From positions 186,001 through 250,000 of the IMG/VR virus record IMGVR_UViG_3300031669_000001: a DNA stretch of 64,000 nucleotides, one strand, 5' to 3'. Made by a program: the position numbers and the translations under genes. Of the stretch, positions 15,885 to 41,870 are shown piece by piece. The notes below the pieces were generated by a model that made no database searches, had not been told where the DNA came from, and saw only the letters and a list, made by a program, of their open reading frames with translations. Position 1 is the stretch's first letter, and the number at the start of each line of letters is the position of its first letter.

Positions 15885-16901
15885 TTACGGGAACACGTAA
15901 AGCTTCTTCGTAAAGTGATCGCCGATCGTTTCGAGAATGATTGTCTCGATGATCTTCCAGTTGCCACCTGCAAGACCAGCGCCAATCATTGGGAAGATGA
16001 TGTCTAGCTTGCGACCATTGCTCTCTTCGACTATTTCAGCAAGCTTTTTCACCTTCTCAAAGCATTTGGCGATAGCTTCATAATCCACGTAGCGTTTATC
16101 ACCGCCACAGCTGTATTGAGTATTGGCATTTACGATGAATTTGAATGGAGAAACTTCGGCAAAAGATATTTCGCCGAGTCTAAGGCCGTCAAAGTCGCCG
16201 TGACCTGATCCACCAGCAGTAGAACTTTGATACTGGTCAATGTAGGCATCGTACGCAGTTGGGAATCTGCGTGCAACTTGTAGAGCGATGCCAGCACCCA
16301 TCACGCCTTGACAATTGCAGCCGTGAACGATGATACCCGTTTGTGGTGATAGGGCATCACCACTGAACTGCAAATAGTTTCTTCCTTGACCTTCTGGTGT
16401 AAATGCGCCTATCATTGCTTTGCTCCAATCAAAATTTACGTTATGATCAACATCTCTCACCAGTTGATCAGGGAGGTTTATCTTCGGCTGCCAATCATAC
16501 TGACGGCCGATTGTGATGTGCATTCTGTAATCTAGACGCAGTCCAAGTTCACGTCGAATCTCAATCAGACGATTAGATTCCACGGTGATAGACCAGAACT
16601 GCCAGTGGCGCTCGATACGAGTCGGATCATACTCGATTTCTACGGTATGACCTTGATACTTCTTCCACAGATCAATCTTGTCTTTGCCAATGCGCTCATC
16701 GCCCTTGACTACGGTGCAGTGAAGACCAAACATAGGACGCTGCAGAGTTAGCCACTGTCCAAACTTCTGGCGAAGGAACCACTGATAGTAGAGATCAAGT
16801 TGATCGCGCGGGAGCTCCACTATGAGAGTACGCTGTTTGTGCAGCTTCTTGAAGTCAGGACGAACAGGGTCATAGACCAACTTACCCTTTACTTTTATCA
16901 T
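15885..16901 (-). CDS. 2H phosphoesterase-like domain fused to a macrodomain
   Basis: Two HxT motifs (HCT, HIT) in the N-half; macro motifs HGCNC.G.MGAGIA, NA.TQ, P.IGAGLAGG.W. Confidence 0.8.
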   Translation of the reverse strand: MIKVKGKLVYDPVRPDFKKLHKQRTLIVELPRDQLDLYYQWFLRQKFGQWLTLQRPMFGLHCTVVKGDERIGKDKIDLWKKYQGHTVEIEYDPTRIERHWQFWSITVESNRLIEIRRELGLRLDYRMHITIGRQYDWQPKINLPDQLVRDVDHNVNFDWSKAMIGAFTPEGQGRNYLQFSGDALSPQTGIIVHGCNCQGVMGAGIALQVARRFPTAYDAYIDQYQSSTAGGSGHGDFDGLRLGEISFAEVSPFKFIVNANTQYSCGGDKRYVDYEAIAKCFEKVKKLAEIVEESNGRKLDIIFPMIGAGLAGGNWKIIETIILETIGDHFTKKLYVFP

Positions 16902-16916
16902 TGATCAACTCCTAAT

Positions 16917-16992
16917 TGGTCGCCCTGGAGGGATTCGAACCCTCGATCGCGATTTTAGAGATCGCAGCTTTACCGCTAAGCATTACAAGGCG
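16917..16992 (-). tRNA. amber suppressor tRNA (anticodon CTA)
   Basis: Acceptor CGCCTTG/CAGGGCG-A-CCA, anticodon arm GCGAT-CTCTAAA-ATCGC, T arm GAGGG-TTCGAAT-CCCTC. Confidence 0.88.
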
Positions 16993-17334: not shown

Positions 17335-17474
17335 TTTTCCTCCGAAGTTTTTCAGTGTATCGTTTCTCTTCTGCTTGAACTTTGCGAAGCCTTTTCAATC
17401 CAGGATCTATCGCTCTCATCTTTTTCATGATCTCAGCCTCGGCTTTTTTAGCCTTAACTGGATCATAGACGTGA

Positions 17475-17591
17475 TTAGTCAAAGTTCACGCTCTTGTTGC
17501 GCTTGAAGGATCCTTTTCCCTTCTTGGAGCGTACAATTTGAAGCTTGTACTTTGGTGTGCGGCAATCTTTGTGAACGATGGATGCTTTCAT
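17475..17591 (-). CDS. arfA: ArfA-like ribosome rescue peptide (38 aa; not in ORF track)
   Basis: MKASIVHKDCRTPKYKLQIVRSKKGKGSFKRNKSVNFD carries the KKGKGS(Y/F).R signature; SD and early promoter upstream. Confidence 0.75.
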   Translation of the reverse strand: MKASIVHKDCRTPKYKLQIVRSKKGKGSFKRNKSVNFD

Positions 17592-17616
17592 GATGTTTCC
17601 TTGATTTGATGGAGTA

Positions 17617-17646
17617 ATTATATCAAAGATTTATATGAAAGTAAAC
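17617..17646 (-). promoter_or_regulatory. T4-like early promoter (representative copy)
   Basis: GTTTACTTT...TGATATAAT; similar copies near 22380, 29490, 33380, 34517, 35483, 38780, 42392, 46893, 48410, 51518, 58134, 60831 (minus) and 49218 (plus). Confidence 0.8.
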
Positions 17647-17939: not shown

Positions 17940-18728
17940 TTATTCTCCTATAGTTGCAGTTTTTTTGAACATGAAAGTAGGGCTTATCGAGATCATGTCA
18001 GGCATGTCGATGAGCTTTACAGGTTTACGAGTTACCTTCTCTGAAGTCCTGTGCTTCTCTGGAATCTTTTCCAGCTCGTCAGTAGTCAGAGGACGAGTTT
18101 CTTCTACTCGCATGAAGTACGATCCTTTGCGGTAACAAGCATCGTATTCTTCCCAAGGATCACCAATATCACGAAGCATAGACTTCTTGATGTCACCATT
18201 GACGTTCTGCAGATCCTTGTGAGAGAAGTGAGACAGAGCTACCATCGTGATAGAATTTTTGATGGCATCCTTTTCTCTCCAGAGCAGGCAGAGATAAGCT
18301 TCGCGAATAGACGGAACTTGCCACACTCTTGCATCGAATATGGGAAGCCATTCCTTCTTAGACGGGAGATATTTTTCAAGATTTCTATTGAAGAACGCCG
18401 TAGCTGTTGCAGCTAGAACTGAACAGAGTTTTTGGTAACGTCCGTCAAACAGGTATTGAGAAGCGCTTGACTCAGGAAGATACCAGATCAGAGTTATCTC
18501 ATCTGATTGAGTGTAGCCTACGAGAGCGTTGGTTTCTTCTGTCAAGAAGCGAGTAGTTTCCTGCATCAGCTTTGTAAGATTCTCGTCGAAAGGTCGCTTC
18601 AGACCGCTTGTGAATGTGTGAAAAGCTCTTCCATCTAGCCGAGCTATCATCGGCATGCCTTTGGAGGCGCGCCGATCTGTTTCAACACCTTCAAGATTCT
18701 TCATGAGATCGCCTAAAGTATCAGCCAT
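17940..18728 (-). CDS. tRNA(His) guanylyltransferase Thg1-like
   Basis: RLDGRAFHTFT, YTQSDEI, FDGR.QK, FDARV, WRE.DA..NS; start set to MADTLG. Confidence 0.93.
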   Translation of the reverse strand: MADTLGDLMKNLEGVETDRRASKGMPMIARLDGRAFHTFTSGLKRPFDENLTKLMQETTRFLTEETNALVGYTQSDEITLIWYLPESSASQYLFDGRYQKLCSVLAATATAFFNRNLEKYLPSKKEWLPIFDARVWQVPSIREAYLCLLWREKDAIKNSITMVALSHFSHKDLQNVNGDIKKSMLRDIGDPWEEYDACYRKGSYFMRVEETRPLTTDELEKIPEKHRTSEKVTRKPVKLIDMPDMISISPTFMFKKTATIGE

Positions 18729-18818: not shown

Positions 18819-19931
18819 ATGAAGAAAAACGTTAGGGCTCTTTTCATCCTCAAGAGGAGACAAGACTATAGCACTGATCTAGTGAACTTCACCAACTTTA
18901 CGGTGTCCACTGGAATGTATAACTCTGCGTCCTTCGTGAGCGATATGCTTAGCGAACACGGCGTCGAGTCAAAAGTAGTTGTGGTGATAGACAACAATGA
19001 CATCGATCGTGAAGTTAGAGATTTCAATCCAACTCACGTGTTTATAGAAGGCTACTGGGTAGTTCCAGAAAAATTTGACGTTCTCAAACCTCTTCATCCT
19101 TCTGTTACTTGGGTAATTCGTTGCCACAGTGAGCTTCCATTCTTAGCACAAGAAGGTATTGCAATTCAATGGACGTTTGATTATCTAGCAAGAGGTGTTA
19201 CTGTTTCTGGCAACAGTCCTCGTATCAACCGAGAGCTAAGAGTCATGGCGGCAGCTGTAGGTATAAGTCACGAAGTTATTGAAAGACAGATTCCTCTGCT
19301 CACAAACTTCTACCCTGTATCTGAGAATGTAGCTGTTCAACCTAGAATTGTTGGAGATACGATCAATGTTGGATGTTTTGGTTCACATCGTCCACTGAAG
19401 AATCATTTGATCCAAGCTCTAGCAGCTATCGAGTACGCAAATCAACGCGGCCTCAAGTTACGCTTTCACGTTAACTCTGGCCGCGTTGAGATGAATGGTA
19501 GCAATGGTTTGAAGAACTTGAAAGCTTTGTTCGCGAACATAAAAACCCACGAGCTGGTTGAACATCCATGGGCTTCTCATGAAGACTTCTTGGAAACAGT
19601 TCGCTCTATGGATCTTTGTCTTCAAGTTTCTTTCACAGAGACATTCAATATCGTCACTGCCGATGCAGTCAACTCTGGAGTTCCAGTCGTAGTGTCCGAC
19701 GAGATTCTCTGGGTTGAGGGACCATTTGCTGATCCTACCTCAACCACAGATATTGTCGAAACTATGAGTGAAGTGATGGCTAAACGTCATTACTTAATCG
19801 AGACTAATCGTCGCAACTTGAAAGCTTATTCCAAGCTAACTAAAAAGCATTGGATTGATTATCTCGAAGAAGTAAGTCCTCGTCACGGATTGAATCTTAT
19901 CATCCTAAACTTCAAGAACCTGTTCTTTTAG
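18819..19931 (+). CDS. glycosyltransferase (GT-B/GT4-like)
   Basis: R..KN, S..ETFNIV.ADA...GVPVV; late promoter ATAAATA upstream. Confidence 0.8.
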   Translation: MKKNVRALFILKRRQDYSTDLVNFTNFTVSTGMYNSASFVSDMLSEHGVESKVVVVIDNNDIDREVRDFNPTHVFIEGYWVVPEKFDVLKPLHPSVTWVIRCHSELPFLAQEGIAIQWTFDYLARGVTVSGNSPRINRELRVMAAAVGISHEVIERQIPLLTNFYPVSENVAVQPRIVGDTINVGCFGSHRPLKNHLIQALAAIEYANQRGLKLRFHVNSGRVEMNGSNGLKNLKALFANIKTHELVEHPWASHEDFLETVRSMDLCLQVSFTETFNIVTADAVNSGVPVVVSDEILWVEGPFADPTSTTDIVETMSEVMAKRHYLIETNRRNLKAYSKLTKKHWIDYLEEVSPRHGLNLIILNFKNLFF

Positions 19932-26952: not shown

Positions 26953-27630
26953 TTACATCCACATCTGTTCAAGCTTACCCTGACGAACATCTCTCAGACG
27001 CATCTTGACTTCACTGCGGTGATCTGTAACTTGATCGTCACGTTCTCTGTAAGTTCTAACCTTATCTCCACGCATTCCAGAGCCTCGATCTTCCTTACGC
27101 TTCTTGTCGAGAGCTTCATACTTTTGAGCGTCGTAGAATCTCTTCACTCGAGTTTCAAGCATCTCGCGCGCTGTCTTCTTGTTGTTGTACTGGCTTTTTG
27201 TAGAAGCTTTAGCCTCTATCCCAGTTGGAAGGTGACGCATGATCACGCAACTTTCAGTCTTGTTGCGGTGTTGACCACCTGGACCAGTATCTTTCGTTGT
27301 GAACATCAAGATGTCTTTCTCGTTGAGACTCCATTCACTTTCTTCAGGCACAACCATGGCCACTACTGTTACCGTTGAAGTGTGAACTCTACCTTTTCGT
27401 TCTGTTGGAGGGATTCTTTGCCACCGATGACCACCGCTTTCTTGCAGTAGCCTATTGACGAGATTGTCCGGCCCGTCGACCGTTAGATTGATTCAACCGT
27501 GCTCGGTTTCAACCTCAACGCCAGCACGAACGCGCTCGGCGAACTTACAATAGATCGCAGCTTGATCGCTGACGAGCAACTTTGCATCTTCTCCACCTTC
27601 ACCAGGTCGGATTTCCAATAACACTTTCAC
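26953..27630 (-). CDS. RF1-type peptide chain release factor lacking domain 1, with in-frame TGA at codon 46 (27493-27495)
   Basis: SD AAGGAG + GTG start; LEIRPGEGGEDA...EHG*...ESGGHRWQRIPPTERKGRVHTST...GPGGQHRNKTES...RGDKVRTY all in one frame. Confidence 0.88.
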
Positions 27631-41704: not shown

Positions 41705-41716
41705 ACAACGATTGAA

Positions 41717-41787
41717 CGACATACGGGGAATCGAACCCGCGATCTCCGGCGTGAAGGCCAGGGTTTTGTCCGTTAAACTACACATCT
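41717..41787 (-). tRNA. Glu-like tRNA with a 6-nt anticodon loop (CTTCAC), no CCA
   Basis: D and T arms intact; stem CTGGC/GCCGG. Confidence 0.5.
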
Positions 41788-41870
41788 CAGATCTTTTTTC
41801 AAAACTTGCTGGAATCGATTAAAATCTGTCAATCGTGATCATATCCACGGCAGCAACCGCTTCAATAATT

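What the first reader, a model, noticed from the sequence alone, without database searches (positions are those of the whole stretch)
17475..17591. Minimal early-expressed ArfA-like peptide
Seen: a 38-aa ORF, first after an early promoter, with VRSKKGKGSFKR. Established: E. coli ArfA carries KKGKGSY.R, and its active form lacks the C-terminal tail and is controlled by tmRNA tagging. Inference: this is a pre-truncated rescue factor with a normal stop codon, hence unregulated, or it is an RF2-titrating mimic.
Basis: partly seen in the sequence, partly recalled or inferred. Interest (0 to 1): 0.6.

Follow-up and report, generated by a model that had tools for sequence, protein, structure and literature searches.

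The report
Phage-encoded minimal ArfA ribosome-rescue peptide
A 345-kb soil jumbo phage carries a real, conserved 38-residue gene that is a stripped-down homologue of the bacterial ribosome-rescue factor ArfA; it ends at its own stop codon, so it escapes the usual tmRNA control, and the phage also encodes its own tmRNA and a suppressor tRNA.

Summary
Window 17591->17475 (minus strand) is a 38-aa ORF with a TAA stop. A near-consensus sigma-70 promoter and a Shine-Dalgarno site precede it, and it carries the ArfA signature.

**Homology**
- Pfam ArfA: E 9.4e-5, but 22.2 bits, below the 25.5-bit cut-off.
- A five-peptide phage profile hits only E. coli ArfA chains in the PDB, at about 1e-7.
- hhalign of the short family against canonical ArfAs: 98.1%, over 34 of 38 columns.
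- The gene is under purifying selection (pN/pS 0.07-0.23).

**What is kept and lost**
- It corresponds to E. coli ArfA residues 11-48.
- Kept: the mRNA-channel tail, Pro23, the Phe25-type aromatic residue and the RF2-docking strand.
- Lost: residues 1-10, Ala18 (now Lys), two of the three hydrophobic-patch residues, the KH motif, and the C-terminal extension that makes bacterial arfA a tmRNA-gated non-stop message.

**Distribution**
- It belongs to a large short-ArfA subfamily: 142 IMG/VR hits, cultured pelagiphages, and Ralstonia phage RsoM2USA (unannotated there).
- The same short form is a syntenic chromosomal gene in 47 of 61 sampled SAR11 genomes.

**Context and reading**
- The phage also encodes a permuted tmRNA, an amber-suppressor tRNA just downstream, and RNA-repair genes.
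- Best reading: an ungated rescue factor that uses host RF2.
- Whether it activates RF2 or only recruits it is untested.

The parts
17475..17591 (-). 38-aa short-ArfA ORF (ATG 17591, TAA 17477-17475); equivalent to E. coli ArfA residues 11-48
   Evidence: the ORF. (Pfam PF03889: E 9.4e-5, 22.2 bits, residues 15-33). (profile against PDB ArfA, about 1e-7). (hhalign 98.1%). (pN/pS 0.07-0.23). (alignment).
17617..17645 (-). Sigma-70-type promoter: -35 TTTACT (17645-17640), 17-nt spacer with TG, -10 TATAAT (17622-17617); part of a cassette repeated five times in the genome
   Evidence: 10 of 12 matches, TG before the -10. (conserved in L008; TATAAT conserved in L009). (five copies in the genome, all before ORFs). 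(the same 26-28 nt seen at three other places in the source contig).
17597..17602 (-). Shine-Dalgarno AAGGAA, 5-6 nt upstream of the ATG
   Evidence: Read directly from the sequence. It is part of the conserved leader.
16917..16992 (-). Amber-suppressor-type tRNA (anticodon CUA, loop CTCTAAA, CCA encoded), same strand, about 480 nt downstream. Linked to the short-ArfA gene in relatives too.
   Evidence: The linkage is also seen in L008 (130 nt downstream), L010 and L011 and L044.
17940..18728 (-). Thg1-like tRNA-His guanylyltransferase (probable start is the internal ATG, giving 262 aa). An RNA-repair neighbour that is conserved next to the short-ArfA gene in relatives.
   Evidence: PF04446, E 1.3e-29. 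(Thg1 lies beside the gene in L008-L011 despite rearrangement).
15885..16901 (-). 2H-phosphoesterase + Macro domain fusion protein. An RNA-repair neighbour downstream of the tRNA-CUA.
   Evidence: Macro E 6e-8; 2H-SAK E 0.004, below cut-off. (2H-SAK and Macro genes lie near the gene in relatives).

Best explanation
The ORF encodes a minimal ArfA-type alternative ribosome-rescue factor that the phage expresses from a strong sigma-70 promoter.

**Proposed mechanism**
- P13 sits at the decoding centre.
- Y15 and the L17-V20 strand dock onto the beta-sheet of the host's RF2. RF2 then hydrolyses the peptidyl-tRNA and frees the ribosome.
- The ORF ends at its own TAA, right after the functional core. 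Synthesis of the peptide therefore does not depend on failure of trans-translation, so it acts alongside tmRNA, including the phage's own tmRNA, and not as a gated back-up.

**Likely benefit**
It would keep ribosomes available during infection, when non-stop complexes rise. Sources of such complexes include mRNA and tRNA cleavage by host defences, host mRNA decay, and read-through by the phage's own suppressor tRNA.

**Shown:** homology, architecture, selection, genomic context.
**Inferred:** binding to the ribosome and RF2, RF2 activation, early timing, the benefit.
For: **Homology over nearly the whole peptide**
- Pfam gives E 9.4e-5.
- Pfam scores for relatives are 29.6 bits for the 76%-identical relative, 25.7 for the RsoM2USA ORF and 33.3 for the CRP-212 ORF. 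All are above the 25.5-bit cut-off.
- The profile hits only ArfA chains in the PDB, at about 1e-7.
- hhalign gives 98.1% over 34 of 38 columns.

**Functional residues named in the literature are kept** (against the alignment)
- The KKGKGS[FY]xR tail.
- Pro23 = P13.
- Phe25 = Y15.
- The strand Q27-E30 = L17-V20.

**A real gene**
- pN/pS is 0.07-0.23, and similarity collapses right after the stop codon.

**The short form looks like a working cell factor, not a poison**
- It is a single-copy, syntenic chromosomal gene in 47 of 61 sampled SAR11 genomes.
- No ArfB passed its cut-off in 61 of those genomes.

**The phage invests in rescue and translation repair**
- It has a permuted tmRNA (Rfam 84.5 bits against a gathering score of 47).
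- It has 53 tRNAs.
- Thg1, 2H and Macro genes lie beside the ORF.
- Two other jumbo phages with the peptide also carry a permuted tmRNA over the gathering score, and a third scores just under it.

**Other support**
- Nonsense suppression is a known source of non-stop complexes (review text), and a tRNA-CUA is linked to the gene in four lineages.
- The pelagiphage homologue HTVC027P gp30 is transcribed early and late (PMC12753301).
- Complex prediction with E. coli RF2 residues 105-365 gave weak support.
  - ipSAE was 0.58 (runs 0.57-0.59), and the best of 3 controls was 0.00.
  - Partner pLDDT was at least 58, and the runs agree in at least 66% of their contacts.
  - The tool's calibration: the mark was reached by 51 of 78 solved complexes and 2 of 108 mismatched pairs.
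  - At 0.60 or under, it was reached by only 5 of those 78 solved complexes and by all 4 mismatches that passed (of 180).
  - The pass may simply reflect memory of the solved ArfA-RF2 complexes.
Against: **The window copy is below Pfam's gathering score** (22.2 against 25.5 bits).

**The N-terminal minidomain cannot form as in E. coli**
- Its folding is coupled to RF2 opening.
- Residues 1-10 are absent, including Thr7 and Lys8, which contact h44 and H69.
- Ala18 is Lys, and that Lys is invariant in the short family. In E. coli even A18T abolishes release while RF2 is still recruited.
- Leu19 and Leu24 of the Trp319-binding patch are Asp and Lys here.

**Other gaps**
- The KH motif of the tail is absent from this copy.
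- ArfA-RF2 pairs are reported to be species-adapted, and the host is unknown.
- No activity data exist for any short ArfA.
- The RNA evidence for this phage is only four small contigs in a soil metatranscriptome. The tool warns that these could be DNA carry-over.
Confidence: 0.6

Rival explanations
1. Recruit-but-not-activate mimic. The peptide occupies the empty mRNA channel and A site and docks RF2 in the closed state, as ArfA(A18T) does. This would block tmRNA-SmpB and host ArfA from non-stop ribosomes, or would tie up RF2. Lower RF2 activity would favour UGA read-through, for example of the phage's own UGA-interrupted RF gene.
For: - The elements tied to RF2 activation are missing or replaced: residues 1-10, Ala18 to Lys, Leu19 to Asp, Leu24 to Lys.
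- A18T alone gives exactly this phenotype in E. coli.
- The phage RF1-type gene carries an in-frame TGA that is conserved in relatives. Its read-through would rise if RF2 were limiting.
- The strong promoter and SD suggest a high dose.
Against: - The same short form is a conserved, single-copy, syntenic chromosomal gene in most sampled SAR11 genomes. That is hard to reconcile with an inhibitor.
- The phage and its relatives carry their own tmRNA, which a channel blocker would also obstruct.
- Complete phages with the peptide often have no RF gene, so the UGA circuit cannot be its general purpose.
Confidence: 0.2
2. The partner is the phage's own release factor. The peptide would recruit the phage-encoded RF1-type factor, which lacks domain 1, to stalled ribosomes. 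Together they would form a self-contained phage rescue pair.
For: - Both genes lie in the same 64-kb early-strand block, about 9.5 kb apart.
- ArfT shows that RF-dependent rescue factors can use RF1, and some RF1/RF2 chimeras accept ArfA (review text).
Against: - The phage factor scores as RF1 (162 bits against 100 for RF2 in NCBIfam; 123 against 66 bits in the PDB). It has a PxT-type motif.
- Its switch-loop region has no Trp, the residue that ArfA's hydrophobic patch binds in RF2.
- The two genes do not co-occur. RsoM2USA and two complete IMG/VR phages with the peptide have no RF domain. A complete RF-bearing phage has no peptide.
Confidence: 0.07
3. It is not a functional ArfA relative at all. 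The ORF would be a chance basic ORF, a leader peptide, or another small ribosome-binding or nucleic-acid-binding peptide that merely shares a Lys/Gly-rich motif.
For: - The protein is very short and of low complexity.
- The Pfam score is under the cut-off.
- Weak profile hits to eL32 and uS14 appear at E 0.07-0.3.
Against: - Similarity extends outside the basic motif (helix, Pro, aromatic residue, strand) over 34 of 38 columns.
- Only ArfA chains are significant in the PDB.
- Relatives pass Pfam's cut-off.
- The gene is under purifying selection, with a conserved promoter, in three diverged phages.
Confidence: 0.05

Closest known systems
E. coli ArfA (YhdL), Pfam PF03889; structures 5MGP, 5MDV, 5U4I, 5H5U
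   Same: - The core is homologous (E. coli residues 11-48).
- The KKGKGS[YF]xR channel tail, Pro23, the Phe25-type aromatic residue and the beta-strand that augments the RF2 sheet are all present.
- The peptide ends about where the ordered, active part of ArfA ends.
   Different: - There are no residues 1-10.
- Ala18 is Lys, Leu19 is Asp and Leu24 is Lys.
- There is no KH motif.
- There is no hydrophobic C-terminal extension, and no ORF continues beyond the core, so the message has a stop codon.
- It is encoded by a phage.
- The Pfam score is 22.2 bits, against 89.5 for E. coli ArfA.
Short ArfA-domain proteins of marine phages: Pelagibacter phage HTVC027P gp30 (annotated ArfA, PMC12753301), HTVC034P gp63; unannotated ORFs in Ralstonia jumbo phage RsoM2USA and Roseobacter phage CRP-212
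   Same: - They belong to the same subfamily (43-53% identity to the window peptide in the five-sequence alignment).
- They share the signature ...A-K-[DE]-[LV]-R-T-P-K-Y...KKGKGSFKR, and each has its own stop codon.
- RsoM2USA is the closest cultured relative of this phage (DNA polymerase 43% identical). There the ORF also lies just upstream of a tRNA cluster, and the phage also has a permuted tmRNA.
   Different: - Pelagiphage copies often carry a 20-25-residue N-terminal extension and lie near terminase genes with no tRNAs nearby.
- The window copy lies in a tRNA and RNA-repair block next to a suppressor tRNA.
Chromosomal short ArfA of SAR11 (Pelagibacteraceae)
   Same: - It has the same 33-49-aa architecture (median 38) with its own stop codon, and begins at the same point of the ArfA core.
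- It was found in 47 of 61 sampled genomes.
   Different: - It is a cellular gene in a syntenic housekeeping neighbourhood (PfkB kinase, HhH-GPD, DapB).
- Its tail ends even earlier, about 5 residues after the motif.
- The papers found here do not report it. A 2024 survey lists arfA in 0 of 2,376 Alphaproteobacteria.
ArfA(A18T) mutant
   Same: The position equivalent to Ala18 carries a bulkier residue (Lys). An ordered N-terminal minidomain is unlikely, which is the condition under which E. coli ArfA recruits RF2 without activating it.
   Different: - A18T is a laboratory loss-of-function allele.
- Here the change is invariant in a large, selected natural family that also lacks the partner residue Ile11 and the whole N-terminal strand. 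The fold context therefore differs.
BrfA (Bacillus), ArfT (Francisella), SmpB C-terminal tail
   Same: All are small or tail-like basic elements that sense the empty mRNA channel. BrfA and ArfT also recruit a class-I release factor.
   Different: No sequence similarity to them was detected. Family scans and the PDB profile search returned only ArfA.

Membership tests
ArfA (Pfam PF03889) | Score at or above Pfam's gathering cut-off (25.5 bits) | tested here: not met
   - The window copy scores 22.2 bits, E 9.4e-5, with only residues 15-33 aligned.
- The 76%-identical relative scores 29.6, the RsoM2USA ORF 25.7, HTVC034P gp63 25.7, the CRP-212 ORF 33.3 and E. coli ArfA 89.5.
- I therefore file it as a truncated variant of the family, not as a canonical member.
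ArfA (Pfam PF03889) | Statistically significant homology to canonical ArfA across the core | tested here: met
   - hhalign of 86 short-family sequences against 12 canonical ArfAs gives probability 98.1% and E 9.3e-14 over 34 of 38 columns.
- A five-sequence profile hits only ArfA chains in the PDB, at 1.1e-7 to 3.1e-7. The next hit is at E 0.075.
ArfA (Pfam PF03889) | Basic C-terminal tail K-K-G-K-G-S-[YF]-x-R that lies in the vacant mRNA entry channel | tested here: met
   Residues 23-31 match E. coli residues 33-41, all but two of them identically. Occupancy of the channel itself cannot be tested here.
ArfA (Pfam PF03889) | RF2-docking elements: the Phe25 aromatic residue and the beta-strand 27-30; Pro23 at the decoding centre | tested here: met
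   - Y15 is invariant in the five-sequence phage alignment.
- L17-V20 and P13 align to these positions.
- Complex prediction with E. coli RF2 gave ipSAE 0.58 against a best control of 0.00. The tool calls this weak support and warns it may be memory of the solved complex.
ArfA (Pfam PF03889) | N-terminal minidomain (residues 1 to about 20, Ile11/Ala18 core, Thr7/Lys8 rRNA contacts, Leu19/Leu24 patch for RF2 Trp319), whose folding opens RF2 | tested here: not met
   - Residues 1-10 are absent.
- The Ala18 equivalent is Lys (invariant in the short family), Leu19 is Asp and Leu24 is Lys (against the structural description).
ArfA (Pfam PF03889) | KH motif of the tail (E. coli Lys44-His45) | tested here: not met
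   The window copy has Ser-Val at these positions. KH is present in canonical Alteromonadaceae ArfAs and in some jumbo-phage copies such as L034.
ArfA (Pfam PF03889) | Made from a non-stop mRNA (internal RNase III hairpin or terminator, dispensable hydrophobic C-terminus), so that tmRNA gates its level | tested here: not met
   - The ORF ends with TAA at the equivalent of residue 48, so there is no C-terminal extension.
- The only strong predicted hairpin starts after the stop codon and is not conserved in relatives.
- All 80 viral and 79 SAR11 copies examined likewise stop 3-28 residues after the motif.
ArfA (Pfam PF03889) | RF2-dependent peptidyl-tRNA hydrolysis on non-stop ribosomes; synthetic lethality with ssrA | not testable with these tools
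   This needs an in vitro release assay and genetics.
ArfB / class-I release-factor-like rescue factors | A GGQ catalytic domain | tested here: not met
   The 38-aa peptide has no RF-1 domain. The only RF-1 domain in the genome belongs to the separate RF1-type gene.

The most novel reading that the evidence does not exclude
Short ArfA would be a natural minimal RF2 activator that works without the N-terminal minidomain currently thought to drive RF2 opening.
- Jumbo phages would deploy it, ungated, together with their own tmRNA and a suppressor tRNA, as a portable ribosome-rescue kit.
- The kit would offset the non-stop stalls caused by host RNA-cleaving defences and by the phage's own stop-codon read-through.
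- The same module would be the missing alternative rescue factor of SAR11. That would extend ArfA to Alphaproteobacteria, where surveys report none.
Probability: 0.35. Interest if true: 0.7.

Novelty: new variant of a known kind. Interest (0 to 1): 0.5.

Why it matters
**For the ArfA field**
- ArfA is described as a tmRNA-gated back-up that is restricted to some beta- and gamma-proteobacteria.
- Its N-terminal minidomain is described as the switch that opens RF2.
- A selected 35-40-residue form without that minidomain and without the gating would test both ideas directly. It is common in phages and near-universal in the ocean's most abundant bacterium.
- A 38-mer is easy to synthesise and to assay.

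**For phage biology**
- It adds stalled-ribosome rescue (tmRNA plus ArfA) to the translation functions that jumbo phages carry.
- It suggests a functional link to phage suppressor tRNAs and RNA-repair genes.

**For annotation**
- The gene and the tmRNA are both missing from the record of the cultured relative RsoM2USA. There, an opposite-strand CDS is annotated over the ArfA ORF.

Tried and rejected
**Searches that found nothing or little**
- Megablast of the region against GenBank phages found no match.
- NCBIfam has no model for the peptide, and PHROGs gave only E 0.35.
- I re-sent it as a 40-codon window reference that adds two upstream non-coding codons. It then found only two close relatives, so breadth came from pattern scans of IMG/VR and of genomes instead.
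- The big representative search was not used, because no claim here rests on the absence of relatives.
- A sample of the class of an ArfA-bearing Alteromonadaceae genome had ArfA in only 1 of 61 genomes. A sample of its family (14 of 41) supplied the canonical set.

**Alternative genetic code: rejected**
- Same-frame neighbouring ORF pairs split by TAA, TGA or TAG number 42, 36 and 16. This follows ordinary stop-codon use of 150, 129 and 32.
- Table 11 was kept throughout.
- The in-frame TGA of the RF gene is described, not read through.

**Ideas tested and rejected**
- The phage RF as obligate partner was rejected.
- An arfA-like internal hairpin was not found.
- The genome has no SmpB and no Pth.

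**Other**
- The first promoter-cassette search, with a 51-nt core, found only the site itself. A 28-nt core found five copies.
- Complex prediction was busy on the first attempt. The run gave only weak support.

Full report
**1. The observation**

The ORF is real and lies at the stated coordinates, but on the minus strand. The ATG is at 17591, the TAA at 17477-17475, and the product is 38 aa. Residues 20-31 carry the quoted motif.

A promoter-like site lies at 17645-17617 on the same strand: TTTACT, a 17-nt spacer with TG, then TATAAT. It matches 10 of 12 consensus positions. AAGGA lies 5-6 nt before the ATG, and no other start codon intervenes.

The -10/leader/SD cassette occurs five times in the phage genome. 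All copies are on the minus strand and each precedes an ORF. The promoter is conserved in a relative. The shape resembles T4-type early promoters, but early timing is inferred, not shown.

**2. The genome**

The window is bases 186,001-250,000 of a 345,069-bp virus record with direct terminal repeats. The record comes from a soil metagenome.

The closest cultured relative by DNA polymerase is Ralstonia jumbo phage RsoM2USA, at 43% identity. Xanthomonas and Stenotrophomonas jumbo phages follow.

ARAGORN finds 53 tRNAs and one tmRNA in the whole genome. Forty-two of the tRNAs are in the window.

There is no sign of stop-codon reassignment. Same-frame neighbouring ORF pairs split by TAA, TGA or TAG (42, 36, 16) follow ordinary stop-codon use (150, 129, 32). 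Table 11 was therefore used throughout.

**3. Homology**

- The Pfam ArfA model matches residues 15-33 at E 9.4e-5. The score of 22.2 bits is below the curated 25.5 bits.
- tblastn against GenBank phages found short relatives:
  - RsoM2USA, where the ORF is unannotated and an opposite-strand CDS is annotated over it;
  - Pelagibacter phages HTVC027P (gp30) and HTVC034P (gp63);
  - Roseobacter phage CRP-212, where it is unannotated.
- A profile of these five sequences hits only E. coli ArfA chains in the PDB, at 1.1e-7 to 3.1e-7. The alignment covers ArfA residues 18-44, and the next hit is at E 0.075.
- Several relatives pass Pfam's cut-off: 29.6, 25.7, 25.7 and 33.3 bits.
- I fetched E. coli arfA by reference and 13 Alteromonadaceae ArfA loci, 11 of which yielded usable ORFs.
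- hhalign of 86 short-family sequences against the 12 canonical ones gave probability 98.1% and E 9.3e-14 over 34 of 38 columns.

The peptide is therefore a true ArfA homologue along almost its whole length.

**4. A real gene**

Two close relatives exist in metagenomes, at 89% and 76% identity. Codon differences between them and the window copy are mostly synonymous:

- window against L008: 12 synonymous and 4 non-synonymous codons, pN/pS 0.07;
- the other two comparisons: pN/pS 0.18 and 0.23.

DNA similarity collapses immediately after the stop codon.

A soil metatranscriptome holds four small contigs identical to this region. One of them (17362-17534) covers the 3' half of the ORF. The tool warns that DNA can be present in such libraries, so this is only a hint of transcription. 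The pelagiphage homologue gp30 is reported as transcribed early and late in infection (PMC12753301).

**5. Anatomy against E. coli ArfA**

In the alignment, window residue n corresponds to E. coli residue n+10.

Retained:
- the tail K33-R41 (window K23-R31), which lies in the mRNA channel;
- Pro23 (P13), which packs on A1492/A1493;
- Phe25 (Y15, invariant in the five-sequence phage alignment), which binds RF2 Val198, Phe217 and Trp319;
- the strand Q27-E30 (L17-V20), which augments the RF2 beta-sheet.

These roles are taken from PMC8012679 and PMC5378476.

Lost or changed:
- residues 1-10, including Thr7 and Lys8, which contact h44 and H69;
- Ala18 is Lys, and that Lys is invariant in the short family. 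In E. coli, A18T abolishes release but not RF2 recruitment;
- Leu19 is Asp and Leu24 is Lys;
- the KH motif is Ser-Val.

At the C-terminus the ORF stops at the equivalent of Arg48. E. coli ArfA is ordered to about residue 46. Its active form lacks the last 17-18 of 72 residues because the mRNA is cut or terminated inside the ORF, which makes synthesis dependent on tmRNA failure. The phage gene has no such extension. The one strong predicted hairpin lies after the stop codon and is not conserved.

So 'pre-truncated with a normal stop' is correct. The peptide is, in addition, truncated at the N-terminus, in the part that drives RF2 opening.

**6. A large subfamily**

- A pattern scan of IMG/VR found 142 viral contigs with relatives. 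The 80 kept encode proteins of 30-71 aa.
- The genome scan gave 223 hits. Of the best 80, 79 are Pelagibacteraceae (SAR11) and one is an Alteromonadaceae genome carrying a canonical long ArfA. The SAR11 ORFs are 33-49 aa, median 38, each with its own stop codon.
- In a sample of that family, 47 of 61 genomes have one copy.
- The SAR11 gene lies in a conserved housekeeping neighbourhood of PfkB kinase, an HhH-GPD glycosylase and DapB.
- No ArfB passed its cut-off in 61 of those genomes. The only hits were the GGQ domains of RF1 and RF2.
- Reviews state that ArfA is limited to some beta- and gamma-proteobacteria. A 2024 survey lists arfA in 0 of 2,376 Alphaproteobacteria.
- I found phage ArfA mentioned only as an annotation, in two papers. 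No functional work turned up.

**7. Genomic context in jumbo phages**

- In the window, the gene follows a Thg1-like gene. It precedes two small ORFs, a tRNA with anticodon CUA (16917-16992) and a 2H-phosphoesterase/Macro fusion.
- In relatives the order is rearranged, but the gene stays beside Thg1, 2H, Macro and CCA-adding-enzyme genes.
- A tRNA-CUA lies within 0.13-1.8 kb in L008, L010, L011 and L044.
- In RsoM2USA the ORF ends 13 nt before a nine-tRNA cluster.
- Pelagiphage-type copies have no tRNAs nearby.
- Outside the window, the phage encodes a permuted tmRNA at genome 306,555-306,937, minus strand. It scores 84.5 bits against RF04321 (gathering score 47), E 3.8e-16, with tag A-N-D-A-N-G-A-L-A-L-A-A.
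- The genome has no SmpB and no Pth.
- Permuted tmRNAs are also present in RsoM2USA (96.7 bits, unannotated there) and in a complete 199-kb phage that carries the peptide (84.4 bits).
- A 210-kb phage with the peptide scores just under the cut-off (44.1 bits), and a 78-kb phage with the peptide has none.
- tmRNA genes in jumbo phages are reported in many papers.

**8. The phage release factor**

The RF gene (26953-27630, minus strand) lacks domain 1.

It is RF1-type:
- NCBIfam gives 162 bits for RF1 against 100 for RF2;
- the PDB search gives 123 against 66 bits;
- it has a PxT-type motif.

It has no Trp in the switch-loop region. It also carries one in-frame TGA, which is conserved at the same site in three relatives of 65-78% identity.

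It does not co-occur with the peptide in other complete phages. It is therefore unlikely to be the peptide's partner. By the E. coli paradigm, the partner would be host RF2.

**9. Complex prediction**

The peptide was folded with E. coli RF2 residues 105-365.

- ipSAE was 0.58 (runs 0.57-0.59), against a best control of 0.00 among 3 controls.
- Partner pLDDT was at least 58, and the runs agree in at least 66% of their contacts.
- The tool's verdict is weak support. The mark was reached by 51 of 78 solved complexes and 2 of 108 mismatched pairs.
- At 0.60 or under, it was reached by only 5 of those 78 solved complexes and by all 4 mismatches that passed (of 180).
- Because ArfA-RF2 complexes are solved, the pass may reflect likeness only.

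**10. Interpretation**

The most likely reading (about 0.6) is an ungated, minimal ArfA-type rescue factor that uses host RF2. It would be expressed from a strong promoter as part of a phage kit that maintains translation: tRNAs, tRNA repair genes, tmRNA and ArfA.

The link to a suppressor tRNA makes functional sense, because nonsense suppression sends ribosomes to mRNA 3' ends and creates non-stop complexes. That link is an inference.

The main rival (about 0.2) is a mimic that recruits RF2 without activating it or that blocks the channel. The loss of the minidomain and the change at Ala18 favour this rival. Three observations count against it:
- the housekeeping status of the same short form in SAR11;
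- the phage's own tmRNA;
- the lack of any general linkage to the RF gene.

The function is untested for every member of the subfamily.

**11. Novelty and score**

I rate this as a new variant of a known kind. The family and the existence of phage 'ArfA' annotations are known. I did not find the following described:
- the short, ungated architecture without the minidomain;
- its breadth in phages;
- its presence in SAR11;
- its pairing with phage tmRNA and suppressor tRNA.

Interest is 0.5.

Noticed in passing
window 26953-27630 (minus); relatives L176-L178: - The phage release factor is RF1-type and lacks domain 1.
- It has a single in-frame TGA, after ...E-T-E-H-G and before I-N-L-T-V-D-G.
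- Both halves match the PCRF domain.
- The TGA lies at the same site in three relatives of 65-78% identity. This suggests programmed read-through, that is, an RF1-like gene gated by the codon that only RF2 reads.
- More distant relatives (L179, L180) are arranged differently upstream.
   Followed up: partly
window 41716-41789 (minus): ARAGORN reports a tRNA-like gene that it cannot assign. It has an anticodon stem CTGGC/GCCGG and a six-base loop CTTCAC, which would present UCA (reads UGA). It may be an opal suppressor, which would fit the in-frame TGA of the RF gene. The T arm also looks irregular, so it may be a pseudo-tRNA.
   Followed up: partly
G000 genome 306555-306937 minus (L195:1056-1438), outside the window: - The phage encodes a permuted (two-piece) tmRNA with tag A-N-D-A-N-G-A-L-A-L-A-A (Rfam RF04321, 84.5 bits).
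- It also resembles the betaproteobacterial tmRNA model (63 bits, below that model's cut-off), which may hint at the host group.
- No SmpB gene is present in the phage.
   Followed up: yes
L092-L171 (Pelagibacteraceae genomes), e.g. L150:1986-2105: - SAR11 chromosomes carry a 33-49-aa ArfA homologue with its own stop codon, in a syntenic housekeeping neighbourhood.
- It was found in 47 of 61 sampled genomes.
- No ArfB was found in the sample.
- Published surveys report no ArfA in Alphaproteobacteria.
   Followed up: partly
L172, L182, L184, L185, L188, L190-L194 (Alteromonadaceae arfA loci): Ten of the eleven canonical Alteromonadaceae ArfAs examined end, at a normal stop codon, in ...Y-L-[IML]-[AS]-A. 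This resembles the C-terminus of the ssrA degradation tag. It may be a built-in degron that replaces the non-stop/tmRNA gating of E. coli arfA.
   Followed up: no
L004:2995-3117 (MG752970.1, about 111.85-111.97 kb) and L196 (about 331.7-331.9 kb); L007:1483-1608: - In RsoM2USA the short-ArfA ORF is unannotated, and a 120-aa opposite-strand CDS is annotated over it.
- The permuted tmRNA of RsoM2USA lies in an unannotated gap.
- In Roseobacter phage CRP-212 the ORF overlaps the 3' end of a 3.6-kb annotated CDS, in another frame.
   Followed up: partly
G000 genome minus strand at 220526, 203625, 57512, 32285, 26004: A repeated promoter/leader cassette occurs at five places: GT[TG]TACTTT, spacer, TGTGATATAAT, TACTCCATC.AA..AGGA. 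Each copy precedes an ORF. It is probably one temporal class of phage promoters with a shared 5' leader.
   Followed up: partly
L013-L015, L028, L033, L042 and others (IMG/VR contigs): Many marine viral copies carry a conserved 20-25-residue N-terminal extension (M-P-G-K-W-D-G-[KR]-S-R...F-[DN]-R-I-F) in front of the short-ArfA core. It is unrelated to the canonical ArfA N-terminus.
   Followed up: no
window 18819-19931 (plus): A GT4 glycosyltransferase of the 'conflict systems' type (PF20706, 26.9 bits) is one of the few long plus-strand ORFs in this mostly minus-strand region. It is conserved beside Thg1 in relative L008.
   Followed up: no
window 35258-55477 (minus): A dense array of 41 tRNA genes lies on one strand, interspersed with ORFs of about 200 aa. 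Several isoacceptors are duplicated.
   Followed up: no
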